Source: Octopus bimaculoides | Lineage: Eukaryota | NCBI RefSeq assembly: GCF_001194135.2 | Contig: NC_068992.1 | Span: 2,811,312 to 2,875,311 of the forward strand | DNA length: 64,000 bases | Direction of reading: 5' to 3' | Shown here: positions 41,202-63,687 of the stretch, one piece after another | How the letters are laid out: each line of letters opens with the position of its first letter | Position numbering within the stretch: the stretch's first letter is position 1 | Notes under the pieces: generated by a model | Databases searched by the model: none | Told to the model about the DNA's origin: nothing | Seen by the model: the letters and a program-made list of their open reading frames with translations, nothing else | Program-made: the position numbers and the translations under genes

Positions 41202-41306
41202 NNNNNNNNNNNNNNNNNNNNNNNNNNNNNNNNNNNNNNNNNNNNNNNNNNNNNNNNNNNNNNNNNNNCACACACTCACACACACACACACACACTCACA
41301 CACACA

Positions 41307-41343
<37 letters not shown>

Positions 41344-43080: not shown

Positions 43081-43487
43081 CAGGCCACGTGTCATCAGTA
43101 ATTACTCAGGGTAGGCAATTGGGGACCTTTATATAGTAAAACACACAAAAATAAGCGAAACATAGGCAATGCAACTGAGTTGGAGACAGATTTACTTCTG
43201 CCTTTTTAGCACATAAAGAAAATGGTGTTGTAGGTGTGGACGCAGCTCCTTTACTACAGCAGTACTATGTGTAGCTTGAATACTGAGATTGAAAAGCAGG
43301 GGCAAATTATACCTACTTAATCTACAAAAAAATAAAATATTTTGTATTTTATGCAGAGTAATCAGACTAACCTTCCTAATTTTATTGAATTAGGTGCATA
43401 TCTTGCCATAAAAGGAAATGTTGCTATCAATCTATTTTATTCAGGGTAGGCACTACCTACCTTGCCTACTTGGGTGGCACATCCCTG
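43081..43487. mobile_element. hAT-type non-autonomous element
   Basis: Ends CAGGCCACGTGTCA / GGTGGCACATCCCTG; 8-bp TSD GTTTATAC / GTTTATAT. Confidence 0.65.
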
Positions 43488-43874
43488 GTTTATATCCACT
43501 ATGGTGCTAGTTGTATACACCCAGGCTGTATAAATATATGCGTATATATTGTGAAGTGTTCCTATATATTTAATCTGTTTCTCGGCTGATTATCGTTACT
43601 CTAGCTTGTAGACATTCATGATAGCCATCAGTAACTAAAAATAAAAAGCTAAAATGATTCTTTTTTAGCATTTTTATCTTCATGTTCTAAACAAAATACT
43701 TACCCCGCCCCACAACCATTTACATTTTTATACTTTTTTCAATTATTAAAATAGTGAAGAGATTTAATTGATCCACTGTTTAAAGAGAATTTAAATGAAG
43801 AGGTATGTGGCGAGGACTTGATAGACAGAAAGAGAGAGAGAGCGAAAGAAAGTAAGAACATGTGGTCACTGTCA

Positions 43875-44260
43875 TGTGGCACTCCATCGCTTACGACGTC
43901 GAGGGTTCCAGTTGATCTGATCAACGGAACAGCCTGCTCGTGAAACTAGCGTGCAAGTGGCTGAGCACTCCACAGACATGTGTACCCTTAACATAGTTCT
44001 TGGGGAGATTCAGCGTGACACAGAATGGGACAAGGCTGGCTTCTTTGAAATACAGGCACAAGAGAAACAGGAAGTAAGAGTGAGAGAAGGTTGTGGTGAA
44101 AGAGTACAGCAGGGTTCACCACCCCTTCCTGCCAGAGCCTCATGGAGCTTTAGGTGTTTTAGCTCAATAATCACTCACAACGCCCGGTCTAGGAATCGAA
44201 GCCACGATCCTGAGACTGCTAATCCGCTGCCTTAACCACTGGGCCATTGTGCCTCCTCTA
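43875..44260 (-). mobile_element. SINE family C, near full length
   Basis: acgacgtcgagggttccagttgatc..ggaatcgaagcc..ccactgggccattgtgcctcc. Confidence 0.85.
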
Positions 44261-45682
44261 CTCTCATGTACACATAAACACAGAGCATTGACTAGTTTAG
44301 TCAGTAATGTCACAGAATTAGTAGCCATGAAGCTCCAGTCAAAAGCACTTAGTTTATTAATATATCCATTAATACATAGAGAATAGTGAATACTAAGAAG
44401 GTTATATAATGCAACCTAGAGCTTATGAATTAGTTGTGTATAACAATTTATCTGTAGTGCTGCTTTAAAATGAGTTTGGTTAGTGAGACCATGCTGGCTT
44501 AACAAGTCAGACATAATGATTTTGAAGTCAGTCGGGACTGGTTCAGCTTCAGCAGAGTTTGAAGCATGTGAATTCTCTCCATCAGACTGTTTATATTCTT
44601 GTTAATATTCAGCTGATCATGTAGATTTGCCAATTATTGCACGTGGAAAATTGCATTACTCAGAGCCAGGTGTATATATATGCGTGTGTGTGTGTGTGTG
44701 TGTATTAATTAATTCTATAAACAAATATTTCTAGTTTTCATCTAAAACAACCAGCAATTGTTTTCTAACCTCAATAACCCCAGTGTTATTCTAGACAATA
44801 GAGAGATATATATTTATATATTCTTATATAAAAACTAATTAATTCATAAGTTCTGTGCAGTCTCTCGGAGATATGGTCCCAAAATAACTTCAGAACAAGG
44901 GAAACTAGATCTCATAGAGAATAAGAGTGTGTGTATATGTGTGTGTGAATGAATGAGTAAGTGTGTGTATTCATATATAGATACACTGATATATATAATC
45001 ATATATATACCTATATACTTATATGTGTAGTGTGTTCAGTTGACTCTCTCCATCTCTGAGCTGCATCTTAGGCCTGCCATACTTCATCCTTAACACCACT
45101 GCTATCTGCTATCATTCTCAGCATCCTCATATATTTGATATCAAATGTCCTCTACACACTTTTGTGACTCCACTTACTTTAGCCATCCTCATATACCTCT
45201 GACCTCCATCTCTGCCACTGTTCATCACCCTCCCCTCCCACTTCCTGAGATACTTTCATCTCTCTCACCTCCTCCTTCTCCTCTATACTGATATCTACCA
45301 CTCTTTTCCATCATTCACTACATCCACCAATTTCTAACCATCTGTCGCTCTCCTCCCACATTCTTATAAAATTACCCACCAACTCTCAATATTTTCTCTT
45401 ATATTCACCTTCTTGTACCTTGAGAGTATACTCTGGCACCTTGTCACCACCATCTTTATCTCCCTTCCAGCTACTTTCATCCACTCTGATATAATGCAGT
45501 GTGGCTTAGTATCTCTTTTTTCTTTTTTTTGATGAGTAGTTCAATTACTATAGTTATGTCATGAAAAAAATTTGCTATCATCAGGTTATTTGAAACATAG
45601 GTAGGAAGAGAAAATTTAAACCAACCCACTTTGCTAAGCCATTAGCAATGTGAGCACTAGGTGTGTATATATATATATATAT

Positions 45683-46682
45683 NNNNNNNNNNNNNNNNNN
45701 NNNNNNNNNNNNNNNNNNNNNNNNNNNNNNNNNNNNNNNNNNNNNNNNNNNNNNNNNNNNNNNNNNNNNNNNNNNNNNNNNNNNNNNNNNNNNNNNNNNN
45801 NNNNNNNNNNNNNNNNNNNNNNNNNNNNNNNNNNNNNNNNNNNNNNNNNNNNNNNNNNNNNNNNNNNNNNNNNNNNNNNNNNNNNNNNNNNNNNNNNNNN
45901 NNNNNNNNNNNNNNNNNNNNNNNNNNNNNNNNNNNNNNNNNNNNNNNNNNNNNNNNNNNNNNNNNNNNNNNNNNNNNNNNNNNNNNNNNNNNNNNNNNNN
46001 NNNNNNNNNNNNNNNNNNNNNNNNNNNNNNNNNNNNNNNNNNNNNNNNNNNNNNNNNNNNNNNNNNNNNNNNNNNNNNNNNNNNNNNNNNNNNNNNNNNN
46101 NNNNNNNNNNNNNNNNNNNNNNNNNNNNNNNNNNNNNNNNNNNNNNNNNNNNNNNNNNNNNNNNNNNNNNNNNNNNNNNNNNNNNNNNNNNNNNNNNNNN
46201 NNNNNNNNNNNNNNNNNNNNNNNNNNNNNNNNNNNNNNNNNNNNNNNNNNNNNNNNNNNNNNNNNNNNNNNNNNNNNNNNNNNNNNNNNNNNNNNNNNNN
46301 NNNNNNNNNNNNNNNNNNNNNNNNNNNNNNNNNNNNNNNNNNNNNNNNNNNNNNNNNNNNNNNNNNNNNNNNNNNNNNNNNNNNNNNNNNNNNNNNNNNN
46401 NNNNNNNNNNNNNNNNNNNNNNNNNNNNNNNNNNNNNNNNNNNNNNNNNNNNNNNNNNNNNNNNNNNNNNNNNNNNNNNNNNNNNNNNNNNNNNNNNNNN
46501 NNNNNNNNNNNNNNNNNNNNNNNNNNNNNNNNNNNNNNNNNNNNNNNNNNNNNNNNNNNNNNNNNNNNNNNNNNNNNNNNNNNNNNNNNNNNNNNNNNNN
46601 NNNNNNNNNNNNNNNNNNNNNNNNNNNNNNNNNNNNNNNNNNNNNNNNNNNNNNNNNNNNNNNNNNNNNNNNNNNNNNNNNN
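45683..46682. other. Assembly gap (1000 N); other gaps at 3818-4113, 25308-25460, 34430-34439, 41202-41268 and 59224-59241
   Basis: N runs flanked by simple repeats. Confidence 0.99.
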
Positions 46683-46713
<31 letters not shown>

Positions 46714-47997
46714 CATACATATATATGTATGTGCATGCACACAGTATTGTACAGTTGATATTTATGTCTATGATCTCCTGGATAAATTTAGCCTGAGTGG
46801 CACAGTGTGCCTCTCCCTTAGAGTTAAATGTATGTATGTGGTTATGCGATAGGAAAATTAGGCTTGGATGCTGTTGTAGCTGTGTAATATTGTCTATTAT
46901 TACATAGCAGTGAAGAAGCATCCTAACATGTAGATATGCATCTTGAATCGAGTCATAATGAGTAATCTCTTAAAATTTCAGTGGGAGACTACAAACACGT
47001 CATGGCTAATTATTGTGTTGGGATTGCTCAGTGTTTGGAATATGCTGTTGTATTCTGATTGGTTAGGCATCGGTGAGATACAGTTGTTAATGCTACATTT
47101 CTGCAGAGAGCAAGGAAGAAACATTGTAGCTGTATTCTATACCAGAGTTAATTCTATACCATTGTTTGAGTTTATTTTGTCTATTTCTGTAGATTGCTAA
47201 AATTGATTGTCATAGACTCAGGTGTGCTTGAACCATTAAAAAGTTTCTTTTGCAGTCAATGTGGTCCTGAGTTCAATTTTGTTGCTTTTCTCATAGAGAA
47301 GTCACCTATCTCTTAGACGTTTGAGACTACAACTTGATAGACAGAAACTGTGTGAAGCCAAATGCACACAGTCTCATCAGCTACTCTCTTACTGATTCTA
47401 CCTGGGAATTTTTTTGAGGGTACATGCATGTGTGGAATACTCAACCACTTTATAATTCATGAACTGGCAGTTCAGTTGATTGAAATACTTCTACCCAAAT
47501 ATATTGGCAGATCCATCATCAATAAAATTGATTTCTTATAAACTGGAAATATATCTGTGGCTTTGTACAAGTATATCATCTAATGAACTTATGGGAAACT
47601 ATTTTATTTAATTATAAAAATTAGTCATATATTTATCAATTAGATAATTAAGAGAGTTACTGTTAAGTAGGACTTTCTTTTATTTTAATTAATTCCACAG
47701 CTAAATTTCGGCTGCTGACTTATTCGTTCATTAAAACATCTGAGATGATGTGAGTAGAGTATGTTACTTAAGAGAAACAAAAACTGCTTAATATCTAGAA
47801 GGTGGTCTTTTATGAAGATGATGTTGAATGAACTTTCATCTTAATTCTTGCCTTTGATATTAAATACAATCTATATTTATTAATGAAATGAGATGTGTCT
47901 ACATCTACAACTTACATATTAAACAAACTGTAATTATTTCTCCCCACCATATTCAACAGTACATACATGAACTTCAGTACTGAATATATTATTAAAC

Positions 47998-48115
47998 AGG
48001 TGGGCATATGGCATAGTGGTTAAAAGTGTGGGCTACTAACCCCAAGATTCTTGTTCGATTCCAGGCAGTGAGCTGAATAATAACAATAACAATAATAATA
48101 ATAATAACATCATCA
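47998..48115 (+). mobile_element. Short tRNA-headed SINE (family D) with (AAT)n tail
   Basis: TGGCATAGTGGTT A-box, gggctactaacccc arm, GTTCGATTCC B-box; no acceptor stem or CCA. Confidence 0.7.
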
Positions 48116-48314
48116 AAGACAGTAGTTATGGAGCTATTGCAGATTTCCCTATTTTTTCCTATTTGTCTCTGATGACAGAATAACCCATACTCAGGGATAT
48201 CCCAGAAACAGCTGTAAGACTTTGACTTTTTTTCCAATAATAGTAATGTGTATGACCTGAGGTGTTTGCCTTAATGTTTGTTGCAATTATATATATATAT
48301 ATATATTAAAACAA

Positions 48315-48420
48315 ACGGGTATATTGGTGTAGTGGTTAAGAATGTGGGCTACTAACCCCAAGATTCTGAGTTCAATTCCAGGCAGTGACCTGAATAATAA
48401 CACAATAGAGAATAATAAAA
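48315..48420 (+). mobile_element. Short tRNA-headed SINE (family D), second copy
   Basis: TGGTGTAGTGGTT..gggctactaaccccaagattctGAGTTCAATTCCaggcagtgacc. Confidence 0.7.
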
Positions 48421-48429
48421 CATCCAGAC

Positions 48430-48760
48430 AGATAGACAATACAAAAGTGTACAGGAAAAACAACAATTGGAGGGACAGGAAAAAAAGGACAGGTCATTCA
48501 TGGCCTTCTTTCTTCAGTCAAGTTACCAGATGTCCTTACAGTTTCGGGCAGTTACACTTGAGACTGTTCGATCTGGTTGCCCACCAAAAAATTTAAGCTA
48601 AGAGCCTTAGACTTTTTAGAAGAAAGCTAGTGAATGTGTACAACAACAAAGACAAAAAACAGAAAACATGGTACACAATTACAAATAACAAAAATATAAC
48701 AACAGGTGTCTTTCGACTGAAGATAAATCAAATTGATCTGGAGTGTATAAAATGAAAGCC
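48430..48760 (-). mobile_element. Penelope-like fragment
   Basis: Contains CTGAAGAAAGAAGGCC and CCGAAACTGT on the minus strand; weak signature only. Confidence 0.3.
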
Positions 48761-49674
48761 TTAAGGCAGGAACATAGGAGATGGACATAAGAGGTGTTGG
48801 TGGTCAGCAGGCAGACCAAGAAAGAAAGATATATATACAACAGGCTTCATCCAGTTTCTGTCTGAGGCTATTGTAGAAGACACTTGCCCAAAGTGCCACA
48901 TAATGGGACTGAACCCAGACCCATGTAGTAGGGAAGCAAGCTTCTTACTCCACAACCACACCTGCACATATCAGTAGATTTTTGTTTCATTTAGCCTACT
49001 AAAGGTATATGTATTTCCTAGTTGTCTGGCTAATAATAGGAAAGGCTTCTCAACTTAAAAACAAAAAAGAACACAAAACTATTGCTCTGAAAATATGCAT
49101 ATTTAAATTAAAAAAAAAAATAAACATCTGTGGCATAATTGATGTAAAACAGTAAAAAAAAAAACAAACAAAAACAATAGGTTTTATAATTAACAAAGTG
49201 ACTTTATTATTTATTAATGGCATCAGGTTCATCATGAATGAGTTTTTTTTTTTTTTATAAACTACCTTTATTTATATTCTATGAATATTTATAAATATTA
49301 CTGAAAATAATTACATATTAATATAATTTACATATAGACTTACAGAGGTATTTCATGCATGATCGGGCTACCAACTTTGCCAAACATTCTTTAGCACCCC
49401 CACCCACAACACATGAATATTTCATCTCTTTCTGAATCAATAAACTGTACATGAAGGCAGTTAGAACTGATATTATTTCATACATATATATAAGAGAGAG
49501 AGAGTAAACCCCCACCCCCTGCTACACACACACACACATACACATTCCGTCTTATATTCATTCTGGTTGTCACATAGGCTTTTGTAATTAACTTACCTTA
49601 TTGCTGCTGTCTGCTGTGATGGAGCAGGTTCAGTGAGTTTATTTGAGAAAGTACCACATGCGTAGGAGTTGTCG

Positions 49675-49767
49675 CATGTATATATATATACAATCACACA
49701 CACATACATATACACACATATATAGAGAGAGAGATATAGATAGATATATATAGATTTATAAATATAA

Positions 49768-49816
<49 letters not shown>

Positions 49817-50119
49817 TGTAGAAATAAATATATATATATAGATATAGGTAGATATGGATTATAAACTGATATATATATACACACATATATATATATACAC
49901 ACATATATATATATATATATAAATATATATATATATACATATATATATTCACTTCCATGTTTTTGTTTTTAATGTTCTTGTATTTCATTTTCTTCACGTT
50001 TTTTGACGTCCTGTACCCATATATGCATATATATATATACACACACATATATATACATACATATATATGTATACACATACATATATATATATGTATATAT
50101 TCATACATATATATATACA

Positions 50120-50182
<63 letters not shown>

Positions 50183-50300
50183 GCTTATATATATATGAAA
50201 GGGAGGGAGAGAGAGATACAAAAATAGATATAGATATAGATATATATATATAGGCAGATAGATACATATAGACAAACAGACAGGTATGTATGTATGTATG
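49675..50300. repeat. Long degenerate (TA)n/(CA)n array; similar arrays at 1-185 and 34300-34880
   Basis: Direct reading. Confidence 0.9.
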
Positions 50301-50705
50301 TATTGTGTGTTTGAAGTGGTGTACAGATATTGTATATTAAAAAGAAGGGGGCAGTCAGGGTTTTAGATAATTCTTTACTTGCACTTTTGTTCATTCAATG
50401 GAACTCTTCAAGATATAATGTAGAGAAAATTTCTTCTGCCTTTTATACAAATCGAAAAGAGGATGTTTTCTTTTGTTCAGAAGAGGAGAAAATTTTGCTT
50501 TTTGGAGAAAGGGAGAAAGGTAGGAAGAAGAACAAGAAAGGGAGTGAAAGAAAAGAGAAGAGGAAGAGAGACGGGGAGAAAGAGGCTGCTTTTCAATTAT
50601 ATTGAATCGATGTGGTCAATCCATTGAAATTTCTTTACAATTCAAGATGTCATTCTTGATTCAGTCGTTGTTTTCAAAAGCATTTCTTTCTCCTCTTCTC
50701 TCATT

Positions 50706-50737
<32 letters not shown>

Positions 50738-51299
50738 GTATATGTGTGTGTGTGTGTATGTATGTATATGTAGTGGTTCTTATATGGAGTATAAAATATC
50801 TGTCAATGCAAAAGTTTTCATCAATGTCCAGTTGCATTCTAGTAAAATGTTTCTCTAATGTTCAATTTGATTGTGTTTACTTGCTCAAAATATGACAGCT
50901 GTTGATCATCCCTACACACTAATGAGGGGTTAATGAGGCAATTATTATTGCTGCAAATATTTGAGTAACATGTGCTACAAAAAACTGCATCGCTTTTGTT
51001 AATATTGGTTTGTTTGTTTTTTTCTAAGCATTTGTTTAAATAATGATGTTTTGCAAAGTCTGTCATTCAAAGGTAAACATCTTGGCCACAGCTCCATGCC
51101 TGCCATCTAACCCTCACCCAACTACTATCGTTTTTTTTTTTTACGTAGATCTAGTTCTGTTTTCCTTCTTTTCTTTTCCCTCAATCCTTTCTTTTTCTCT
51201 CACTCTTTCTCCCTTTTCCAGTCTCTTTGTTCTGCTGACTTATCTCTGTCAAATCTTTGAAAGTGATCAATGTCGTCCCTTTCACTCATTAATATTACA

Positions 51300-54200
51300 C
51301 TTAGGTTTACGTGTGGTATTGTTTTCAGAGCTAGGTTAGTCAGTAAACGCTATAAATCTGTAATTAAGGCACTAACCGAAGCGGGGATACCTCAGAGTTT
51401 AGTTTTCACCATCGGATTTAACGGTAAATTGTAGTTAAAGAACAGTAAAAGGAATATGTGAAAATACGTTGTCCTAGTTTTATAAGTAAATTTGTTGATA
51501 TTGTTTACAGTCGCAAAATTTTAAATAAAACTTTAAAAATAAAGAAATTCATTTTATTTAACGTAATTATAGGATGTGGTCTGAGGTAAGATCAGAAAAC
51601 GAAGCGTTAATTTTATTTCAATAAATTATATAGCATTTAAGGTAGACAATAGAAAGGTCGAAAGTACACAACGGGCGTACATCGCATCGGTCATTCAGTG
51701 GACCTTAACTTAACCCTAGGTCACACACACATAAAGTTCCTGATACCCTTAGAAACGGAATAAACCACAATTGAAAAGTCCTCAATACCTCAACACAATA
51801 CGTGTCGTGTTATTCTTACAGAACTTCAGATATAAATATCGAAAGGTAATATTTATCCTTTCTTAAACGTGGATGTTCTGTCGGAACAAAATTTACTGTG
51901 GTAGATATCATGAGAAAAATTCTCATACTGGCTTTTTGGTGCAAAATGCAATTCACAGAGAAGTCAATGCAAGAGTTCTCCCATGGTGCTAACTACCACA
52001 GTAAAAGTTTGTTCTAATAGAACATCCACGTTTAAATGGGATAGATATTATTCTGTAACATTTTTGGCTCATACACCAGAATCACTATCATTAAGTGACG
52101 CACTATTGTGTCTATGGGTGTGTGTGTATTTTAAGAATTTACTATTTGCCAATGTTATACCAATTTCCAACGGCACCAAAAAACAACATGAAACTTGTAA
52201 AGTTAAGCCGCAAAACAAATCAAGTAAACTTCTCCTAAGATGAGTAACAACAATAATAACAACAAAATGAGTTGAGTGGAGTCGACAGAGAGAAAATAGC
52301 AGCGCCTTCGGTTTTAGGCTGCTGTTTCTGTCGACACGGCAACGTCATCATTAGCAGACTGGAAGAGAGAGAGAGAGAGAGAGTGAGTGAGAGAGGGAGG
52401 GAGACGGAGAGCCATCTGCTTTTAAACCTCCTCCCCCACCACAGAGAGAGAAAGAGAGACAGACAGAGAAAGTGAAAAAAAGAAACAAAGATAACACCAT
52501 TCCACAACACGAATAATATTTATGTGGGATGGTAAATATACACAAATATATGTGTACGTGTACGTTAGAGTGTCGTCGTTATTGACGGCAACCCACATAA
52601 AGAGTATTATTGAATATGTATAAATAGACTTATATTTATTTACACATGCACATACGCATTTTTATACACACACACGTATGCATATGTGAGTGCATGTGTG
52701 GTTCTGTGTGTGAGTGTACATTTATATATATCTAATTATATAAATATATATATATTTAGATGAACAGTTTTCAGTGGTTTTTCTGCCTTAGGACGACGAC
52801 GGAGTTCCCGTCATGGGTCCTGTGTGAGGGAGGAAAACACCAAGTGGGTTACAGAACCAAATTAACGACACAAAGTTGTAGTATCCCACTTTATGTTTGT
52901 TAGTTTCAAAGTTTGTGGGTGACAACGACCAATGTGAAAAGAAAGGGTTGAGAAGAAATTAGTATTTAACGATGGAGAAAACAAAGATTTTGCCAGTGCC
53001 CGCTTGTTGTCAACATGTTCTGATAATCGCTTCTTTGTTTTCTCTTGCAGATGGAGTATCTAAACCATGTAAGTATTACTTTTTCTTTCTTTTTTTTCTT
53101 TCTACATTTATGGATATCTTTAAAAAAAGATTAACAAACTTTGACTATATTCAACTTATTTTGTAATTGTTTTTTTGTCTGCGAAAGGCGGTGAGTTATT
53201 GGTGTTGGTAATAGAGATGGGTGGTTAATTAATGTTTCATATTAACTTGCTTTGCTAATGACAATAGTGTTGATGTGATAAAAATAAAAAAAGTACCGTT
53301 ATTTATTTATTTATTATTATTATATTTTTTTGTGAGTTGTTATCTGAAAGCTCTGTAAACGGAAGGTGGAAGTAAGGAAACGGTTGGTGGCTATCTCCGT
53401 TCCTACATTCGTCTTCAACAACTTCCTTCTCTCTCTCTCAAATATCCATACATCAACAGCTCGCCGAGTCTATCGATAAATCTAACAATTATAGTCTACA
53501 ATAATAACAGTAACGTGAACTGGGATAATGTTTCTAGAAACGAGAAAGCAAACTCTGTGTGTGTAAATTCAGAATACACGTTCCTGTAGATAGATACAGG
53601 CTGTTCAGGGGATTAGGAAAATGTTGACGGAATAGAAGATGAGACGGTATGGTTAACAATAATAATAATAATAATGTGTGTGTGCATGCAAAGAGATTGT
53701 TAAATCTGGTGGTGGGGGTCAACGAAAACGAATAAGCAAGAAAGAATATAAATAACTGGTCGTCCTAAGAATAAATATATAAATTAGGTCAAAAAACAAG
53801 AACTCTACATAATCATCTCCCGTTTAAAATTACTTTTTCTTTTCACATCAGAAAACCTAAGTTTGAGTAGAATTTTAAACTTTAAAAAAGTATTTTCCTC
53901 GCGAATAAACTTATATTTTGTCTGTGTCTGCAGCTTTGGATTGCACCAAAATGACAATCCAATCAAAAGCCTATTAATAGAAAGATTAGTTCCCCATGCA
54001 TTAATAATACATTTTCACATTACCATCTGTGTACTTGTATATGAATCTCACTGACGTAACTTGTTAGCAGCATGTTTACACATGTGGTCGCTCGGCCTGC
54101 TGAAAATAGTAGCCAAATCACATTCAAATTGTACCCTAGCATCTTGAAGAAAAAGAACACAATAAAATAATACAGGACTATTTCGATGCGGCGTAGAAGT

Positions 54201-54300
54201 AAAATACAAAACGGTCACAGTGACTACGTCGCTGATCATAAGTCTCTTTGGTGGGGGCTATTCCGGGGTTAGACAGCAACGGGTATTAATTTCAGATTGT
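51300..54300. promoter_or_regulatory. CpG-enriched, TE-free block (promoter-like or constrained regulatory region)
   Basis: Hand count of 22 CpG in 51301-52000 versus 5 in 56401-57100. No recognisable SINE or LINE for about 3 kb. GA-rich tract at 52360-52470. Confidence 0.45.
53051..53068 (+). CDS. Candidate 18-nt microexon (DGVSKP in phase 1-1, or MEYLNH if read from its ATG)
   Basis: ttctttgttttctcttgcag|ATGGAGTATCTAAACCAT|gtaagta. Branch-like ctgat at 53020-53024, U-rich tract after the donor, length divisible by 3, no stop when joined to the phase-1 donor at 33981. Confidence 0.55.
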
Positions 54301-54684
54301 ATAGTAGTAGTAGTAGTTATAGTAGCTTGTCAGTAGTACTAGGAGTTAATGGTGATGTATAATGATACTTAGAAGTCTTCACTTGATGCTGTCTTATCAG
54401 GTTTCTCCTGTTGTTGATATAATATTTCCAGCCCGTCTCTGCGTTAAGTACTCAGTCATACAGGTATGCATTGATACATAAACACATCTACTTTGGCAAG
54501 ACACACGTATTTATTCTAATTAATTGTTTAACTCTGCAATTCACCACTACATGAGAATTACCCGGGTACAACTCAACAAATCGTGTGCATTAAATTGCCT
54601 CAGTATTTAACTGATCCTGGGAGAATGGAGTGCATAGAAGACCCTTTAGTCTGTCTCTCAACTGATTCTGCTGATCATAATTGT

Positions 54685-54845
54685 TTATAACAAGGGCACA
54701 AGGTCTGATATTAGGGGTAGGACAGCCTATTACATCTACCCCTGCACTTGACTAATTTTTTATTTTTAATGATCCTGGAAGGATGAAAAGCAAACTTGAC
54801 TTTGGCAGGATTTCAAACTCACAATGCGAAGAACTGGAACAAATA
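54685..54845 (-). mobile_element. SINE family B, diverged
   Basis: ggatgaaaagcaaacttgactttggcaggatttcaaactc. Confidence 0.7.
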
Positions 54846-54919
54846 GCAGAAAGGTTGTGGCTGGTGTTTTGTCAAGTCTGCAGATCCACATTAATATTAA
54901 CAAGCTTATCGTGCCAACC

Positions 54920-55015
54920 AAAATAGTGGTATTTTATCTGTCATCAAGTTCTGAGCTCAAATTCCATCAAAGTCGACTTTGCCTTGTTCTGGATCAATAA
55001 AATAAATACCAGTTC
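54920..55015 (+). mobile_element. SINE family B, the only sense-strand copy
   Basis: gttctgagctcaaattccatcaaagtcgactttgcc..aaataccag. Confidence 0.7.
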
Positions 55016-55156
55016 CAGTTCTTGAAGTAGCACAATTGATCGTTATATAATAGCAATTGGTTCTACTTGGGCTGATATACTCCTAAGGCACAAGCCAATG
55101 AGGAGTCCCCAGGGTAGTTATTTGAACTAATAGCAGATTTTAAATCTTTACATTAA

Positions 55157-55377
55157 CCCTTTGATACCAATCCACCTGAAACTGCCTCTGGCTCTGTGGT
55201 ACAAATGTCTTGTTTTCAAAAGTTCTGAATTAAAATCTTCCACCAAACCTTAGTCACAATTTGTATTCCTAACACTAGCTGAATGGTAACTAAGTTATTT
55301 TACTAAATTCTTTGTTATATTTAAAATAAATTGAAAGAAACACAGAGCATCTCAACAGAAATATGGTAACAAAAGGG
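55157..55377. mobile_element. piggyBac-like MITE with intact TTAA TSD
   Basis: TTAA|CCCTTTGATACCA ... TGGTAACAAAAGGG|TTAA (TSDs 55153-55156 and 55378-55381). Confidence 0.8.
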
Positions 55378-55544
55378 TTAAAATAGCTTTTAAGATTTCT
55401 TTTTCATTGTTTAGTCAGACAAAAGGGTTGTGCTACAGGCCCTCAGAGATTGGTTGGAGAGGGAAAAAGTTCTTCTCCAACCACAAACCTGGCATGAACA
55501 CTTGTAGGTGAGGGGATCCTTCATAAGATACCCCAGAACCAAAT

Positions 55545-55800
55545 GACAATATATCGCCGAATAGGCCACAGTGGGATTTGAGCTCAGAATGCAAAGAGCC
55601 AGCACATAAGGCATTCTGTCCAGTACTCTAATGATTCCTCTAGTCCACTGCTCTAGACTGGTACTTTATTTTTTGTCCCAGAAAGATGAATGTTCAAGTT
55701 GATCCCAATGAGATTTGAACTCACAACGCAAAGTTTTGGAATAAACACCACAAGGTATTTCATGTGATGCTCTAACTACTCTGCCAGTCACCTCTCCGCC
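55545..55800 (-). mobile_element. Two diverged SINE family B heads in tandem
   Basis: gatttgagctcagaatgc and gatttgaactcacaacgc. Confidence 0.6.
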
Positions 55801-55961
55801 AGCACTCACACAAATTGATTCTACTTGTGTTGATTTACTTCTGAGACACAAATCAATGAGGATTCTTCTTTGGGGTTATCTGAAGTAACAGCCAAATCTC
55901 CTTTAGCAACATTTTGCTATTTTTTTTTTTTAATGACATTATCTAAAGTAGATTATGTATA

Positions 55962-56174
55962 AGAGAGTGCTGAAAAGTTCCTGGCTTTAAGGGTGTCGTG
56001 AAAGGCCTGGTTGGAGGCTCAACCTCCCAAGTTCTTTTACAGGGCTTAGAAAAACCAAAGGGCCACTGCAATCAGTGTGTGAATCTGAGAGGGAAATATG
56101 TTGAATAAAATCATAATTAACTAATCCTCTTGTATTGTCTTCTATTCAAAGCCAGGAACTTTTCAGCATCGCTT
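55962..56174 (+). mobile_element. Mariner-derived MITE
   Basis: TIRs GAGAGTGCTGAAAAGTTCCTGGCTTT / AAAGCCAGGAACTTTTCAGCATCGC. Interior resembles a mariner transposase C-terminus (KAWLEAQPPKFF..GLEK..GHCNQCVNLRGKYVE*). Confidence 0.8.
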
Positions 56175-57999
56175 TGTGTTATACTTTAGGGGGATTATAT
56201 CTTTGGCCGTAGGTTCATTGGATCTCAGCTGGGTTAAGGTCAAAACAAGAATTCTTTATTCAAAAACGATATCTTCATGCTTTGACCCCAGGGTTTATTT
56301 AGCAAAATCTCTGTATGGTTAGATGATAGGGGACAGGCAAATGTTTTGCATAGATTCTAATTTAATTGAGGTCTTTGATAAGAATTACCAGCTTAGCAAA
56401 TCTTACAAGTGCCAATATTTTCCATTTTGAGTTCTTTACTACACACACATTTTGGCAATAAGGGAAGAATTTTTGTAGCTTTAACTTTCTACTTCACTAT
56501 TGTTATCGTTTACTTTTTATATTTTTTTATTTATTATATGTCTAATAATTTTTTGGGGAAACTAATCAACAGAATGGTTACTTCAAATGATTTCTTTTTG
56601 CTTTCTTATTTGAATCTCGTAAACTTCATGTGTCTGTGTCTATATGTGTGTGGATTTCTGTCTAAAAACTGATTTAGTATTTTGTCGGTTGTTTTGTTGT
56701 TGTTTACTCTATAAGTTTGCCATAATTAATGAAATTCACAATATTTTTAGTTCCAATCTTTTATAATTGTATATAATTGGATGTCTAGGCTGTTGTCATA
56801 ATGGTTATATCACACCAACATTCTCCTAGTGACTTAAAGCACTCAAGATTAATGGATGAACTCCACCACCCAAAAACATCAAAAACATCTGTTTACTTTG
56901 TTATATAATATATTGATAATGTGTTGATATTCAAATCTCTTTTCTTTTATCCTTCTGTATCATTTCTGTAATGATTAAAAGAAAAGTATGCATCCGTTAA
57001 AAGCTTCTCATTATTTTCTACCTTCTTAGTTCTACATTCAAATACAGCTGAGTTCGGTTCCTTTCCTTTTAAATTTTTCAGGCTGTATGATATAATATCA
57101 CTCGTAGCTATTCAAGAATAAGATTTAAGCAACTATTCTTATAGATTCAGGATTAATTTTGAACAATGGGCCTTTATTTTTTGTGTGCTTTTTTCTAAGA
57201 TTCTTCAGCTCAATCTAATTTAATCTGTCTACAGTGAGCAATTTTCTCCATGACTAGATACAATAAATGGCTTTCTTACAGGTTCAAATGGGCCCCAAGC
57301 ACATTTGAACTGGTGATAAACCTTGTATTTATACGCATCACTGCTTAGCACTGCCACCCTCTAATTTAATGTGTTGCCAACTATAAATAGATTTTATTAC
57401 TGATAGAGCCGAATATCACTGAAGAGTATCCGTTACTTTCTTGAATTGATTTGAAGACAATTCTCATTACCATCAATAACATCAGTTATGAAAATTTTGT
57501 CATTTAGAACTAGAGTTGTCTCTTTTGCTTGTAGTGTTTGGATTTTAGAGAAAGTTTCTGTCTCTTTTTGCTGAATTTTAAGCACAGCCCAGAGAGCGAC
57601 TGTGCCTATTAAGTGAATAGAAATCTCACCTAATCAAAATTTTTCATCTGATAGACCCTACTCTGTGTGTAATTAATAATACCTCAGCAATTAATGTAGG
57701 CTCTCTTGTTAAATTCTGCTGTTAATTTTTGTTTTCATCTGTCCTGATGAAGCAGTGAATAATTCCTGTTATGGTACACAGCCTCAGAAATGTTAAACTT
57801 TGAACCTTTTTTGCTGTTACTTTTGAGGATTTTAGAGAAAAATTACTCGTTGTAGAGGACAGAGTATAAAGTAACTCGATGAGTCTCATAAGTAGAGAAA
57901 TCAAGTAACTGGCAAGATGAAGTGGTGAACTGGTTTTGGTTCTCATTTTTACATACATGACATCATTAATGACTTTGCCAAAGAATTTCTTGCTTGTAT

Positions 58000-58212
58000 T
58001 AATGTATTTAAACAGGCCCTATCCAGCCAAGATATTCTGTTTTATGTTCAAACTGGACACATCTGGCCTCTCACACCTACCCTACAATGTCATCCTAAGA
58101 ATAAACAACCATACCATCGAAATCTCAAAGCTACAAGATAATGCATGATTAATTGAAAACAATGTGAATAGATAAGCATTGCATATAACAAAGTAGTCTG
58201 AACGCTAAAGGG
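58000..58212. mobile_element. piggyBac-like MITE, second family
   Basis: Shared core; ends ctgaacgctaaaGGG|TTAA. Confidence 0.7.
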
Positions 58213-59149
58213 TTAATGTTTTACTCGTGACCAAAACAATAAATGGTGAAAATATTCCAGTGTAGCCACATTTAGAGAGAATTGTAGCAAGTGAACACCA
58301 GGAATGTATGTACTTTTCTTCTGACAGAATTAGACCAATATTGAAGAATGTTGTCTACTTATTGAAATTTGATTAATATAATCACATACCTAAATCTATG
58401 GACTGGCTGAAATGGGCTAATTACCTTCCAGTGTTTACTGTCTCTCAATATTCTCCTACCAAATTCTGCCCACACCAACTTTTATGCATTTATAATATTA
58501 TTCTACTTACTTGAACAAATAAAATGTTGTACTAATGTTAATGAAATCTTCTTAATCTCTCTCGCATATTTATAAGCTGTGTTGATTGATATGAGAAATC
58601 AATATCATTTCGTACCTACCTCTGTCTTCGGCCTCAAAGAGAGTACATCAATTCTTGCTTTAGAATATATTTTGTTCTCTATAAATACAGAATGAGAATT
58701 TCTATTACAATGTCATCAACGTCCATCTAAACTGAGGACTGCAATTTACCCAAACCATAGCAGAATCCCTCAATTAACCAAAGGTGTATACTATGACAGG
58801 TTTACCTCAATCAGTCTAGTTTTTCTCAATACTGTTTTGAGAAGTATCAAGTAATGAATTACACAATTTATTCAAGCTGCATCTTCCTAAGACAAAAACA
58901 TACACACAGCTAATCAAAAAAAGTCTATGTGGTAGCCTGCAAGACAAAGCAGTGAAAGTTTTTCAGACATTCATCCTACCATCTTAAAGGATATTTGCAC
59001 AAAGTGTTAAAAAATCAAATAACAAATTTCCAATGAAGCAAGTTGCACACCACAACAATGACCATGTAGATGTCTGGAGAGGGGCAACTGTTCCTCTGTT
59101 TCTGAAAACTTCTATAGTTTCATCCCAACTGCTTACTGTTGACTTAGAG

Positions 59150-59460
59150 TAGTGGTTCCCAAGCTTTTTCAGGGTGCCACTCGTTTGGTTCTAAGGCCAC
59201 ATTCCTAATTCCCCCCCCCCCCCNNNNNNNNNNNNNNNNNNGCCAACTCACCATCGCAAACCATTTTCTGCAGCAAATTCAAATCAACAGTATTTCACCA
59301 AAAAAAAAAACTTAGCCTAATTAACCCTTTGTTTTTTTTTTTTCATCCATTGCCCCATTTTGGTCACCCCATTGTCGCCCCATTTTCTTCAATGCACTCT
59401 GGATCTTTCCACCCCCACCCCCCAGAGGGTTGGCGGTACCACCCACTTTGGGAACCACTG
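59150..59460. mobile_element. hAT-Charlie-type MITE
   Basis: TIRs TAGTGGTTCCCAA / TTGGGAACCACTG; perfect 8-bp TSD ACTTAGAG at 59142-59149 and 59461-59468 with central TA. Confidence 0.85.
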
Positions 59461-62099
59461 ACTTAGAGTATGCAGACTAAATGAGTTTTTGCTTAGAGAT
59501 CATTACCATCATCATCATTGTTGTCATCCTTTTAACATCTCTGTTGGCATGAATTCGATGGATTCACAGCCGCACACATTACCATTCTTTAAGGCCATTT
59601 GTCATCATCATTGTCATCATCATCATTATCATGTAATTAGTTGAGACCAATATTCATAGAACTCCACTCACAACTTTCTTAGTCTTCCTCATATGGCACA
59701 TTTCTCACCAAACAACTCTTTATGTCTTCTTGATGGCATTCCTTCAAGAAGGCTTATCCCTCTTCTGCTCTCTTGTAGAGCCTGAAGGGAGACAGAGGTG
59801 GGAGGAAGTCTTGAAATGATTATCAAATATTTAATGGAGACTGTTTGCTACTCCCACTCCATATAAGCCATTTATTTGAGAACCACAATCTATACCCCTG
59901 AAACCACATTCTCTCCACACATGATCTTAGTTATTTCTCATGCACTTTTCATGTAGCTTAAATTCACATTCACATCAAGCTTTCGTAAATGTTTCACTTT
60001 TGGTTTCCAACTTTCACAGTCATGCGATATCATGTTCGTTATGCATATTTCAAGCAAGTTACCTTTTCCCCACAAAAACAGAAGAAGAAAACTGTCCTCT
60101 GGAGAGTTAACAACTCCTTATCTTCTTCCCCTCCCACTAGTATTTATTGATAGTCATAAAGTGTGTTCCTTGAGGAGAGGGAAATTGTGAGATTTTAGTC
60201 TGAGAACGAGATTTTTCAGATTCTATTCTTGGAAGATATTTGATCAAACTGTGGGAGCTGCTACCTGTAACTGGATGCCCATTCTAACTGCTACTTTCTT
60301 ACCATGTTGCTGCTTTCTGTTTTCAATCATGAGAGGTTAAAACAATCATTAGTAATTCATTAAAAAAATATTATCTTTTCCTTTTGAAAACCGCAATTCA
60401 ACTGACGAATGTTATAGTTCTGCTATTTTATATATCTTATTTTGTCAGTAAATTATATTTTCTCCAAACAAAATGGAATTAGCAATCAGAAGCAAAATGA
60501 TTGCCATTGTTATGGTAATCATTTTGTTGGAATAAGTAGCATTCTTTCCTCAGCAAAGTAATCTGTTTGTATAAGGCGATGAGATATAGATCTTTTTTAA
60601 AAAGAAAAATCTTTTATTAAGTCATAGGGAAAGCCCCTTTTAGCTAATTACAATCTTTGATTCACCATTGAGGGGGGAAAAAGTAAAACAAATAAAAATA
60701 AATAGATGGAGAGCTTTTTGTTTTATACAGTGCTGAGATATATCTTACTTAAGCAGAGAAGGCAAACAAAAAGTTTATAAATAAAATATAATAAAATAAA
60801 AAGAGAAAAAAGTCTGTGTATGCAGAGTGTATTATTTGCCATGTTATGGATAACGATATGCAATCAGATTTGAAGAAGCTGGTTTTGTTATCACGCAATC
60901 TTTTCAAATGTTCAGTTTCTCTGCAAGCTTGAAAAGAAAAATGACTGAAGTTAATCTCTGCTTCTTTGTTGCCATGCATGCTGCAGCACAATGCTGCACA
61001 ATGCCAGTCATGTGCACAACATTGATATAACTTCAGCATCGGGTTGACATTCTTTGTATTTCTGTTTTCATCTTGGTTTTTTTTTGTTTTTGTTTCTTCA
61101 TGTACCATGATTTTTATTGATAACTTAGATAATTTTGTAACCACATGCATGATTGTTCATACGCTGAATGCATGTAACGTGACCATATTTCTTTGTAATG
61201 TGGCAGTAAGGCAAAGTTACTCCATCTAATTGGTTTTCTATTGACTATGAGGAAGATGATAGTATTTCCAATTAAAAGATAGAAGTAACATTAGGAAGAC
61301 AATCAGGTTAACTACATATGAAGTTCTTTTTCAAGGAAATCATTCTACTTAGCAGAAGTTTTCTGAGGAAATTTGCTAAACATAAGTTCCATACTCTTTT
61401 ATATAAGACTTGGCTTAAAATCTGTTCTTTGAATTCTACTTTGATGTTTTTCTATGGTTTATATTTCCTGATTATCTTTAGATAAATATCCTTGAAATGA
61501 AGTCAAAGCTAAATGTGTAATTCTATATTTCCACTCACCCAGAAGGTTAGTGTCTTGTATAAATATGGAATTTAACTTCTCTGTTAAATCAGTCTTTTTT
61601 TACTGAAATAAATAAACATTTTCCATGAACTCTTGAAATTCTTTGGTAATTGTGGGGTTTCGATAATAAGAGATTCTTGTCTGTTTTTCACCTTTGTTGT
61701 TGTTTAACCCCGACCCACCCGACCTGTGAAGCACACTTTTGATCAGATATTCTGATTATAACAATTCTAGCTCTTCACAGACACAGACATACTTTGACCC
61801 AGAATACTTTATCTAATACATCCTTCCATTTTGTAGAAACTTTAAAATATGTGAAACTTGGTTGCTATTTCTAGCAAGCCAAACAATTACATAGAGGCAC
61901 CACACTTGTTTGACACTTTGCCAAGTGAATTCAGTTTTAAATCTTGATTCACTTCTAAAGAGGTGACTACACACGTCTGTGTGTGTGTGTGTGTGATTGA
62001 ACTCCTGAATCTATATTTGAAAAATAGTTTCTGGAACAACAACTTTTCACTAACCCAAGACATTAAGGTTAGTTTGTATTGAATTCTTAGACGTCTGTA

Positions 62100-62390
62100 A
62101 GTTCCCTTTTAACAGAACATTATTATTTACATTATTTACATTTGACGGATATTTGTCCTCATCTTGTTGTTCGTTAACAGAACGTTTTGGCTGATGTATT
62201 CTCCAGCCTTCATCCAACCCCAAGATTCCGAGTTTGATTCCAGGCAGTGACCTGATTAATGGTAATGATAATAACATCAGAAAAATATCTCAGGAATGTG
62301 GACCCAGGTTCAAAATTCCCTCAGGACAAATATTCATCAAATGTAAATAATGTAAACAATGTACATAATTCCTCATCTCTCAAATATAGA
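62100..62390. mobile_element. Family D SINE fragment with Penelope-like tail, partly duplicated in inverted orientation
   Basis: aggacaaatat..tcaaatgtaaataatgtaaa is present on both strands (about 62122-62160 and 62323-62362); GATGAAGGCTGG..AGCCAAAACGTT lies on the minus strand. Confidence 0.6.
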
Positions 62391-62451
62391 ACTGCAGAAC
62401 ATTATTATGTCTTTCTGAAGATTTTTTTAATAATTTATCTCTATAATTATT

Positions 62452-62640
62452 GGTTTCCAATTTTGGGCACAAGGCTAGCAAGTTTAGAGAAGGGGCTAAG
62501 TCAATAACATTGACCCCAGCGCACAACTGGTACTGATTTTATTGACCTCTGAAAGGGATGAAAGGCAAAGTCAACCATTGCAGAATTTGAACTCAGAACA
62601 TAAAGACAGACGAAATTCTGCTAAGCATTTTACCTGAGCG
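62452..62640 (-). mobile_element. SINE family B
   Basis: Same core. Confidence 0.8.
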
Positions 62641-63227
62641 TACATGGTGGTGCTCCAGCATAGCCACAGCTGCCTGGCTGAAACGAGTAAAAGCTTACCA
62701 CCTGAGTTATGTCTATAATTATTGAGCTTCATACGATTGAAGTAAAACCTATTTTCGCTCATAATAGTTTTACTTGTATGAAATACAGTTATACTTTGCA
62801 ACCATTTCCACTGAGAAAAATCTTCAAAATTTCTGTTTTGTTCTGTGATTCCAGTGAAAGTCTCCAAACTTGTTGCATTTCAGATATTTCTTCATTTTAA
62901 ATGCTCAGTATTTACAGACTCTATTGTTTGCTGTAGCTTGTTCTCCAAAGTCGAATGGCAACTATTCATGTTGATTTTTCCAATTATTACAATCCAATAC
63001 CGATATAGCCGACCTCCTCTTTTCAGGTTTTCACTTCTGTCTGCTGGTTCTAAAATTACATGATGTAAAGAGCTCAAACAGAGGTCAATGCATTTGATGT
63101 CAATTGGGTAATCTTCAAAACTTCATTGTCCAAATTTCCTATTTCCTCAGAACAATTGTTCTGAGTGATATTAAATACAGAATACACAGCAGTAGTAGCC
63201 GTTGGTTTTGTACAGTGGCTATCAACT

Positions 63228-63580: not shown

Positions 63581-63687
63581 TCCATAGAAGATTTTGATGT
63601 TAACCTTTATCTGCAATAAATTGGTTAAACTTTAACAATACACAAAATATTTTAATTCTTTATACAATTTTTAATAATATTTAATTA

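What the first reader, a model, noticed from the sequence alone, without database searches (positions are those of the whole stretch)
53051..53068. Candidate 18-nt linker microexon of a Dpr-like Ig protein
Seen: a near-ideal acceptor (pyrimidine tract, ttgcag, branch-like ctgat 27 nt upstream), a consensus gtaagt donor and a U-rich downstream tract enclose 18 nt. Spliced to the phase-1 donor of the Ig exon it reads VRLTVK-DGVSKP and exits in phase 1, so inclusion or skipping both keep the frame. Known: Dpr/DIP/IgLON proteins have a short Ig1-Ig2 linker, and mini-exons in LAR-family receptor phosphatases (meA/meB) tune Ig spacing and ligand choice. Inference: a 6-residue switchable linker could diversify neuronal recognition in this family, which I do not know to be described in cephalopods.
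Basis: partly seen in the sequence, partly recalled or inferred. Interest (0 to 1): 0.75.

Follow-up and report, generated by a model that had tools for sequence, protein, structure and literature searches.

The report
Real, already-annotated 18-nt linker microexon
The 18 bases are a genuine tiny exon that encodes the six-residue hinge between the first two immunoglobulin domains of an octopus Dpr-like cell-surface protein, but it is already in public gene models and looks always included rather than switchable.

Summary
Window 53051-53068 (+) is ATGGAGTATCTAAACCAT. It has a ctgat branch candidate at -27, a 17-nt pyrimidine tract, a tTGCAG acceptor and a GTAAGT donor. Joined to the phase-1 Ig exon 33768-33981 it reads VRLTVK-DGVSKP.

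It is a real exon. The RefSeq protein XP_036363964.1 (Octopus sinensis) matches both window exons exactly and reads ...VRLTVKDGVSKPSVHISG.... Models from O. bimaculoides, O. vulgaris and Argonauta hians (DGVSMP) contain it too. Spliced RNA-seq contigs from two distantly related cephalopods carry ...CAAAG|ATGGAGTGTCTAAACCAT|CTGTTC....

An AlphaFold2 model puts DGVSKP exactly in the coil between the last strand of Ig1 and the first strand of Ig2. Sequence and fold searches place Ig1-Ig2 closest to Drosophila Dpr2/Dpr4.

"Switchable" is not supported. All 10 orthologous sequences that span the Ig1-Ig2 junction include the exon and none skips it. The segment is the family's canonical linker. A gastropod homologue encodes it as its own 30-nt phase 1-1 exon. 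A bivalve homologue has it fused to the Ig2 exon.

A switchable linker does exist in the cephalopod paralogue (+27/30 nt).

Two transcripts retain the upstream intron end. They are probably splicing intermediates and less likely an internal first exon.

The parts
33768..33981 (+). Exon for the second half of Ig1 (VSWLKK...VRLTVK plus 1 nt, so it ends in phase 1) of the Dpr-like gene
   Evidence: Read. Pfam V-set E 1.8e-6. PDB best hits are Drosophila Dpr4/6/2/10. 100% identical to residues 46-116 of XP_036363964.1. tblastn with the Argonauta orthologue gives 94% identity.
33982..53050 (+). Intron of 19,069 nt between the Ig1 exon and the microexon
   Evidence: Follows from the two exon boundaries. 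No other Ig-like exon lies in it.
52918..53079 (+). Conserved block around the microexon (at least 130 nt upstream, the exon, and about 11 nt downstream)
   Evidence: Alignment to the genomic contig L007 from a related octopus shows 2 mismatches in about 115 nt over 52960-53075, against about 80% identity elsewhere along 52908-54530. In the distant cephalopod only the last 44 intronic nt plus the exon still align.
52972..53050 (+). In-frame ATG-initiated reading frame that runs through the acceptor (MEKTKILPVPACCQHVLIIASLFSLA|D). It is a possible signal-peptide-coding internal first exon, but more probably just intron.
   Evidence: Window translation. The equivalent frame MVGKSQPF.FHQIWQHLLIILSLFFLA|DGVSKP is present in two RNA-seq contigs, L002 and L009, which keep this part of the intron while the downstream junction is spliced.
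53020..53024 (+). Branch-point candidate ctgat (A at 53023, 27 nt before the G of the AG)
   Evidence: Read. It is retained as ttgat in the distant cephalopod transcript L002.
53030..53050 (+). Polypyrimidine tract (53030-53046, 16 of 17 pyrimidines), UGC (53046-53048) and acceptor AG (53049-53050)
   Evidence: Read. The acceptor score is among the 11 best of 3,555 AG sites on the + strand.
53051..53068 (+). 18-nt microexon ATGGAGTATCTAAACCAT, phase 1 to phase 1, encoding (D)GVSKP(S), the Ig1-Ig2 linker
   Evidence: Present in proteins from O. sinensis, O. bimaculoides, O. vulgaris and A. hians. Spliced mRNA contigs L003-L006 carry ATGGAGTGTCTAAACCAT between the Ig1 and Ig2 exons. AlphaFold2 coil 117-122 is exactly DGVSKP.
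53069..53074 (+). Consensus donor gtaagt, followed by a T-rich tract to about 53104
   Evidence: Read. The donor score is among the 32 best of 3,464 GT sites.
53069..64000 (+). Start of the downstream intron (more than 10.9 kb). The Ig2 exon lies beyond the window.
   Evidence: tblastn with the orthologue and a D.G.Y.C scan find no Ig2 or Ig3 exon in the window. The O. sinensis gene spans about 340 kb.

Best explanation
Window 53051-53068 is a genuine, apparently constitutive, 18-nt phase 1-1 microexon of a cephalopod Dpr-like gene. The gene encodes three Ig domains and a hydrophobic C-terminal tail. In O. sinensis it is annotated as 'hemicentin-1', XP_036363964.1.

The exon encodes exactly the six-residue hinge (DGVSKP) between the last strand of Ig1 and the first strand of Ig2. 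It lies alone inside at least 30 kb of intron, 19 kb downstream of the Ig1 exon and more than 10.9 kb upstream of the Ig2 exon.

Inference: its recognition depends on unusually strong, conserved signals. These are the branch site, a long pyrimidine tract, the UGCAG acceptor, the GTAAGT donor and a conserved upstream intronic block.

Inference from partially spliced contigs: the downstream intron is removed first.

The separately encoded linker exon is an old feature of mollusc Dpr-like genes, not a cephalopod-specific regulated insert.
For: - Same-species annotation: P0152 (XP_036363964.1, O. sinensis) is 100% identical to both window exons and reads VRLTVKDGVSKPSVHISG.
- Other annotations: O. 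bimaculoides XP_052828202.1 and the older UPI00071DA123, O. vulgaris CAI9730866.1, and A. hians GAB1606071.1 (DGVSMP) all include it.
- Transcripts: intron-free RNA-seq contigs L003-L006 show ...gtcaaag|ATGGAGTGTCTAAACCAT|ctgttcac. They come from a cephalopod equally distant (68-71% identity) from Octopus and Argonauta. Five distinct proteins from this lineage that span the junction (P0153, P0218, P0219, P0221, P0222) include it.
- Structure: in the AlphaFold2 model (mean pLDDT 84) strand 107-116, coil 117-122 (DGVSKP) and strand 123-128 follow one another.
- Canonical linker: it aligns gap-free to Drosophila Dpr2 and with a 2-residue gap to Dpr4. All 40 homologues aligned have a linker at this position.
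- Age: the gastropod homologue P0159 encodes its linker as a separate 30-nt phase 1-1 exon that also ends ...AAACCA. The paralogue isoform P0023 keeps its linker while skipping Ig2, so the linker is its own exon there too.
- Conservation of flanks.
- Splicing order: L002 and L009 retain the upstream intron end but are spliced downstream. That is the 'downstream intron first' pattern reported for most SRRM4-dependent microexons (PMC10250204).
Against: - 'Constitutive' rests on the absence of a skipping isoform among assembled contigs and gene models. It does not rest on junction counts from tissues, so a minor or tissue-restricted skipped form would be missed.
- No RNA-seq contig from an Octopus species itself was found for this gene. 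Support within the genus is the RefSeq/GenBank models only.
- The strongly conserved upstream intronic block and the UGC next to the acceptor are features also seen at regulated neural microexons.
Confidence: 0.78

Rival explanations
1. It is a regulated, switchable cassette microexon. Inclusion or skipping of DGVSKP would change Ig1-Ig2 spacing and tune partner recognition in neurons.
For: - Length 18 nt, frame-preserving, strong donor, UGC adjacent to the AG, and conserved intronic flanks all resemble neural microexons (PMC10250204).
- The paralogue does have alternative linker lengths: +27 nt in five RNA-seq contigs and +30 nt between O. bimaculoides isoforms X1 and X2.
Against: - None of the 10 orthologous sequences that span the Ig1-Ig2 junction skips the exon.
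- RefSeq lists a single isoform for this gene in O. sinensis and O. bimaculoides, whereas it lists several for the paralogue.
- The acceptor is strong, not weak as is typical of SRRM4-dependent microexons (PMC10250204).
- Skipping would remove the whole canonical hinge and leave Ig1 strand G abutting Ig2 strand A.
Confidence: 0.12
2. The exon has a dual use. An internal promoter in the 19-kb intron would produce a transcript whose first exon runs through the acceptor. The pyrimidine tract would then encode the hydrophobic core of a signal peptide (MEKTKILPVPACCQHVLIIASLFSLA|DGVSKP), giving a secreted or anchored isoform that lacks Ig1.
For: - Two contigs from different sequencing runs (L002 from SRR8281669, L009 from SRR30931884) have this structure. 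Each has a complete downstream coding sequence and an ATG-initiated, signal-peptide-like frame.
- The window has an in-frame ATG at a similar distance, -79 against -82 nt.
- At least 130 nt upstream are about 98% conserved in a related octopus.
Against: - The 5' ends of L002 and L009 differ (478 against 343 nt upstream), and the L002 leader carries 3 upstream ATGs.
- Beyond -44 nt nothing aligns between the distant species and the window.
- The N-terminal residues of the putative peptide are not conserved. A pyrimidine tract read in this frame is hydrophobic by composition.
- By a rough estimate from codon frequencies (not run as a test), an in-frame ATG in open stretches this short is expected in about 40-50% of cases.
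- No such isoform exists in any octopod annotation or octopus contig.
- Downstream-first splicing intermediates explain the contigs.
Confidence: 0.08
3. It is a chance pseudo-exon: strong splice-like motifs in a T-rich intron that are not used.
For: 6% of random sequences with the window's composition contain an equally strong pair.
Against: Exact agreement with annotated proteins in four species and with spliced mRNA contigs in two further cephalopods.
Confidence: 0.02

Closest known systems
Drosophila Dpr proteins (Dpr2/Dpr4; Wirin family of Cheng et al. 2019, PMC6525511)
   Same: Ig1-Ig2 give the best PDB sequence hits (E 1e-25 and 1e-24) and the best fold hits. Ig1 superposes on Dpr6/Dpr10 Ig1 at 0.8-0.9 A with 39-42% identity. 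The hinge length equals that of Dpr2. An expansion of Dprs in molluscs is published.
   Different: The cephalopod protein has a third Ig domain, which is the DIP/IgLON-type architecture. Other mollusc homologues have two. No binding data or phylogeny were obtained here.
Neural (SRRM4/eMIC-dependent) microexons
   Same: 18 nt, frame-preserving, GTAAGT donor, UGC beside the 3' splice site, conserved intronic flanks, and partially spliced RNAs with the downstream intron removed first.
   Different: No evidence of alternative or neural-specific inclusion. The 3' splice site is strong rather than weak.
LAR-family receptor phosphatase mini-exons meA/meB (PTPdelta/PTPsigma). This rests on my own knowledge; the only result here is that PTPdelta Ig1-3 structures appear among the fold hits.
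   Same: A very short exon that contributes residues at or near an inter-Ig junction of a neuronal IgSF receptor.
   Different: meA/meB are alternatively included and change ligand choice. This exon appears constitutive and encodes the whole canonical hinge.
Linker mini-exon of the cephalopod paralogue (O. sinensis XP_036363767/769; O. bimaculoides XP_052828063/064)
   Same: Same position and same phase. The linker DS(T/A)..SHS is a separate exon, because it is kept when Ig2 is skipped in P0023.
   Different: The paralogue has documented alternative forms of the linker, +27 or +30 nt. This gene does not.

Membership tests
Dpr subfamily of Wirins (Dpr/DIP/IgLON) | Ig1 (and Ig2) sequence and fold closest to Dpr rather than to DIP or IgLON | tested here: met
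   phmmer against PDB gives Dpr4 1e-25 and Dpr2 1e-24, against DIP-theta 4e-15 and neurotrimin 1.2e-14. Foldseek ranks Dpr2 and Dpr4 first.
Dpr subfamily of Wirins (Dpr/DIP/IgLON) | Two-Ig ectodomain | tested here: not met
   The AlphaFold2 model and the alignment show three Ig domains in the cephalopod proteins. An Ig3-skipping transcript (P0219) and the 2-Ig mollusc homologues do have the Dpr architecture.
Dpr subfamily of Wirins (Dpr/DIP/IgLON) | GPI anchor or C-terminal hydrophobic signal | tested here: inconclusive
   There is a hydrophobic C-terminal tail, predicted as a helix over residues 364-388. No GPI predictor was available.
Dpr subfamily of Wirins (Dpr/DIP/IgLON) | Placement inside the Dpr clade in a phylogeny; binding to a DIP-like partner | not tested
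   Only best-hit logic was used. Binding cannot be tested with these tools.
Neural SRRM4/eMIC-dependent microexons | Length 3-27 nt and frame-preserving | tested here: met
   18 nt, phase 1 to phase 1.
Neural SRRM4/eMIC-dependent microexons | Alternative, neuron-enriched inclusion | not testable with these tools
   No read-level RNA-seq was available. Indirectly, all 10 orthologous sequences that span the junction include the exon.
Neural SRRM4/eMIC-dependent microexons | UGC motif near the 3' splice site, strong 5' splice site and weak 3' splice site | tested here: inconclusive
   UGC at -5 to -3 and a GTAAGT donor are present. The acceptor, however, is among the strongest in the window.
Alternatively included inter-Ig mini-exons (meA/meB type) | Lies at an inter-Ig junction | tested here: met
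   Coil 117-122 between Ig1 strand G and Ig2 strand A.
Alternatively included inter-Ig mini-exons (meA/meB type) | Both plus and minus isoforms exist | tested here: not met
   No minus isoform was found in the protein collection. The paralogue does have two linker lengths.

The most novel reading that the evidence does not exclude
The linker exon is not purely constitutive. One possibility is that it is skipped in a restricted cell population. The other is that the conserved block just upstream (52918-53050) is an internal promoter and first exon, so that the acceptor's pyrimidine tract doubles as signal-peptide coding sequence and yields an Ig1-less isoform of a Dpr-like receptor. The recurrent contigs L002 and L009 would be that isoform. 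Together with the paralogue's +27/30-nt linker forms, this would make separately encoded hinge exons a general device for diversifying mollusc Dpr-like receptors.
Probability: 0.15. Interest if true: 0.55.

Novelty: already known. Interest (0 to 1): 0.27.

Why it matters
The finding shows that a bare-sequence reading can pinpoint a real 18-nt exon lost in more than 30 kb of intron. The exon itself, however, is already part of the RefSeq/GenBank models of four octopod species and behaves as an ordinary constitutive exon.

The modest added value is comparative. In mollusc Dpr-like genes the Ig1-Ig2 hinge is encoded by its own phase 1-1 mini-exon: 18 nt here, 24 nt in the paralogue and 30 nt in a gastropod. 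In one bivalve gene it is fused to the Ig2 exon. The hinge length varies between genes, and in the paralogue it also varies between isoforms.

That arrangement offers an easy route to change inter-domain spacing in an expanded family of presumed neuronal recognition molecules. It is worth testing with read-level RNA-seq.

Tried and rejected
- The word-indexed protein search with the Ig exon alone found only one short paralogous fragment, P0001 on L001, a 792-nt ENA contig. The exhaustive HMMER search was needed to reach the orthologues.
- Regex and tblastn scans for the remaining exons (Ig1 first half, Ig2, Ig3) found none in the window. The flanking introns therefore exceed 33.7 kb upstream and 10.9 kb downstream, unless an exon is hidden in the N gaps.
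- Self-BLAST of 52500-53600 matched only microsatellites, so the exon region is not part of a repeat within the window.
- Genomic DNA of the O. sinensis and A. hians loci could not be fetched. The genes span about 340 kb and 135 kb.
- P0167 was not on record.
- A literature search for the SRA run numbers gave nothing, so the species of the RNA-seq and genomic Logan contigs are unidentified. From identities they are inferred to be an outgroup to Octopus plus Argonauta.
- A sensitive alignment of the L002 leader to 3 kb upstream of the exon found no similarity beyond -44 nt.
- Rfam and tRNA scans of the window were empty.
- Papers on Dpr/IgLON and on microexons mention cephalopods only in passing. 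None describes this exon.
Full report
**1. The observation**

The sequence at 52980-53110 reads ...caacatgttctgataatcgcttctttgttttctcttgcag|ATGGAGTATCTAAACCAT|gtaagtattactttttctttcttttttttctttct. The 18-nt segment is 53051-53068. The candidate branch site ctgat is at 53020-53024, with its A 27 nt before the G of the AG. The pyrimidine tract is 53030-53046. A UGC sits directly before the AG, and the donor is the consensus GTAAGT.

The upstream Ig exon is 33768-33981, with acceptor ttaacag and donor aaag|gtaagc. It translates VSWLKKSPKQHPLTVGTYTFIEDANISVVHNNQTHEWNLLIKDVQISHSGVYECQVSSSNKLSRLVRLTVK and leaves one base. Splicing to 53051 therefore gives G|AT GGA GTA TCT AAA CCA T| = DGVSKP, entering and leaving in phase 1.

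**2. Is it more than chance?**

I scored sites with a rough splice-site weight matrix written from general knowledge of metazoan consensus frequencies. The acceptor is among the 11 best of 3,555 AG sites and the donor among the 32 best of 3,464 GT sites on the + strand. The pair is the single best pair enclosing 3-30 nt on either strand of the window.

In 300 first-order Markov simulations of the window, 6% had an equally strong pair. Only 2.3% had one that was also a multiple of three and open in phase 1. That is suggestive, but in a genome of gigabases it would not be enough by itself.

**3. Decisive external evidence**

An exhaustive HMMER search with the Ig exon found an Argonauta hians protein (P0003, GAB1606071.1) that reads ...LVQLTVK-DGVSMP-SVHISGTGY.... 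A search with that protein returned XP_036363964.1 of Octopus sinensis (P0152, named 'hemicentin-1'). P0152 is 100% identical to both window exons and reads ...VRLTVKDGVSKPSVHISGTGYVENT....

Members of the same 90% cluster carry the same six residues. They are:
- O. bimaculoides XP_052828202.1;
- an older O. bimaculoides model, UPI00071DA123;
- O. vulgaris CAI9730866.1.

The window is therefore from one of these Octopus species or a very close relative. The exon is already in public annotation.

Independent transcript evidence comes from RNA-seq assemblies. Contigs L003-L006 hold an uninterrupted 397-codon reading frame, so they are spliced mRNA. They show ...ctaacagtcaaag|ATGGAGTGTCTAAACCAT|ctgttcacatcagc.... 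That is 17 of 18 nt identical to the window, and the one change is synonymous.

The source species is unidentified. Its protein is 68% identical to Octopus and 71% to Argonauta, which are 81% identical to each other. It is therefore an outgroup to both, and I infer it is probably a decapodiform. A second, related species (P0218) also has DGVSKP.

**4. What the six residues are**

Full-length P0152 matches Drosophila Dpr4 and Dpr2 across Ig1-Ig2 at E 1e-25 and 1e-24. This is well ahead of DIPs and IgLONs (the exon alone).

An AlphaFold2 model built on 41 homologues has mean pLDDT 84. It has three Ig domains and a hydrophobic C-terminal helix. Strand 107-116 ends at K116, coil 117-122 is exactly DGVSKP, and strand 123-128 is SVHISG. 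Foldseek ranks Dpr2 and Dpr4 Ig1-Ig2 first. Ig1 superposes on Dpr6/Dpr10 Ig1 at 0.8-0.9 A.

'Linker microexon of a Dpr-like Ig protein' is therefore an accurate description. One qualification applies: the cephalopod protein has three Ig domains, whereas Dprs and the other mollusc homologues have two.

**5. Is it switchable?**

The hinge is not an extra insert. In the HMMER alignment it pairs without a gap with the Dpr2 hinge, and with a two-residue gap with Dpr4. All 40 aligned homologues have a linker at this position, although it varies in sequence and length.

Ten orthologous sequences span the Ig1-Ig2 junction: five gene-model proteins from four octopod species and five distinct RNA-seq-derived proteins from the two other cephalopods. 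All of them include the exon. No form joining LTVK to (A)VHISG appears among the hits or the cluster members.

RefSeq lists one isoform for this gene in O. sinensis and O. bimaculoides, while it lists several for the paralogue. The exon therefore appears constitutive. This is negative evidence from assemblies and models, not junction counts, so a rare or cell-type-restricted skipped form is not excluded.

**6. How old is it?**

In the bivalve Dreissena polymorpha homologue P0171, the Ig1 exon boundaries are the same (…GTKT|VVW…LTVI|). The linker DSKAEAM, however, is continuous with the Ig2 exon, with acceptor tattcag|ATTCAAAAGCAG.

In the gastropod Plakobranchus ocellatus homologue P0159, the linker (E)STEYKHFKP is a separate 30-nt exon, ccgcag|AATCAACAGAATACAAACACTTTAAACCAG|gtaggt. 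It has the same phases and also ends in ...AAACCA.

In the cephalopod paralogue, isoform P0023 keeps the linker DSTSSTHS while skipping Ig2, so the linker is a separate exon there as well.

A separately encoded hinge mini-exon is thus shared by gastropod and cephalopod family members. It was either lost or never present in the bivalve gene examined. These genes are homologues, not proven orthologues.

**7. Flanking conservation and the odd transcripts**

A genomic contig from a related octopus (L007) is about 81% identical to window 52908-54530 overall. Over 52960-53075 it has only 2 mismatches in about 115 nt. Conservation extends at least 130 nt upstream and fades about 11 nt past the donor. 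Against the distant cephalopod, only the last 44 intronic nt (branch site, pyrimidine tract, acceptor) and the exon align.

Two RNA-seq contigs from different runs, L002 and L009, retain 478 and 343 nt of the upstream intron while being correctly spliced from the microexon donor onward. Gene callers translated them as MVGKSQPF.FHQIWQHLLIILSLFFLA-DGVSKP... (P0154, P0220). The window has an analogous frame, MEKTKILPVPACCQHVLIIASLFSLA-DGVSKP, from the ATG at 52972.

This could be an internal first exon with a signal peptide. Several points argue against that:
- the two 5' ends differ;
- the L002 leader has three upstream ATGs;
- the N-terminal residues are not conserved;
- a pyrimidine tract read in this frame is hydrophobic by composition;
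- no octopus model or contig shows it.

The simpler reading is partially processed RNA in which the downstream intron was removed first. That order is reported for most SRRM4-dependent microexons (PMC10250204). I rate the internal-first-exon idea at about 8%.

**8.

In the paralogue, O. bimaculoides isoforms X1 and X2 (XP_052828063 and XP_052828064) differ by 10 residues in the same hinge: LRVKD[SSSPNAGSSD]STSSTHSD.

In the distant cephalopod, three contigs from three runs carry a 27-nt segment that two other contigs from two other runs lack...GTAAAAG|ATCCCCTTCCAAATGCCAGTCTTTCAG|ATTCTGCAGCAACGTCTCACTCAG|ATATAACG.... Whether this is a cassette exon or an alternative 3' splice site cannot be decided without genomic DNA. 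The paralogue is not in the window.

**9. Verdict**

It is not supported on what the exon does (a switch) or on novelty, because the exon is already annotated in four species. Published work already reports Dpr/DIP expansion in molluscs (PMC6525511). I found no paper on this exon.

Interest is low to moderate. It is an ordinary constitutive microexon with a tidy structural role. There is a small residual chance of regulated use, and there is a more interesting alternative hinge in the neighbouring paralogue.

Noticed in passing
Not in the window: paralogue transcripts L011-L015 (linker region); proteins P0225/P0226, P0155/P0229: The paralogous Dpr-like gene has two forms of the same Ig1-Ig2 hinge. 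They differ by 27 nt in RNA-seq contigs from five runs and by 30 nt between O. bimaculoides RefSeq isoforms X1 and X2. It is undecided whether this is a cassette exon or an alternative 3' splice site.
   Followed up: partly
L002 1-478 and L009 1-343; window 52972-53050: Two transcripts retain the 3' end of the upstream intron but are spliced downstream of the microexon. The retained part gives an ATG-initiated, signal-peptide-like frame that is also open in the window. They are either splicing intermediates or an internal first exon.
   Followed up: partly
Proteins P0219 (orthologue) and P0023 (paralogue): Whole-domain skipping isoforms exist. P0219 lacks Ig3 (VHVLNTY|ANDNTSTSH), which gives a two-Ig, Dpr-type protein. 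P0023 lacks Ig2 but keeps the linker.
   Followed up: no
L016 27219-27248 (Plakobranchus) and L010 10313 (Dreissena): The hinge is a separate 30-nt phase 1-1 exon in a gastropod homologue but is fused to the Ig2 exon in a bivalve homologue. The split of Ig1 into two exons at ...GTKT|V.W... is shared by both homologues, and the boundaries of the Ig1 second-half exon match those of the window exon.
   Followed up: yes
Proteins P0223 vs P0156 (O. sinensis paralogue isoforms X1 and X2): A second 9-residue difference (DDKTFPLSP) lies in the stalk after Ig3. It suggests another small alternative segment in the paralogue.
   Followed up: no
window 14900-15053, 30870-30976, 31379-31519, 2794-2935, 62454-62609: These are copies of one interspersed repeat (68-72% identical) that also ends contig L007. 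The window is otherwise full of TA/CA microsatellites and has 1,544 N in gaps at about 3.8-4.1 kb, 45.7-46.7 kb and 59.2 kb.
   Followed up: no
L001 (ENA metagenome contig ERZ27250227 k141_598370, 792 nt): A metagenome assembly contains a cephalopod-like paralogous Ig1 exon that reads into a CA-repeat intron. Host DNA is therefore present in that metagenome.
   Followed up: no
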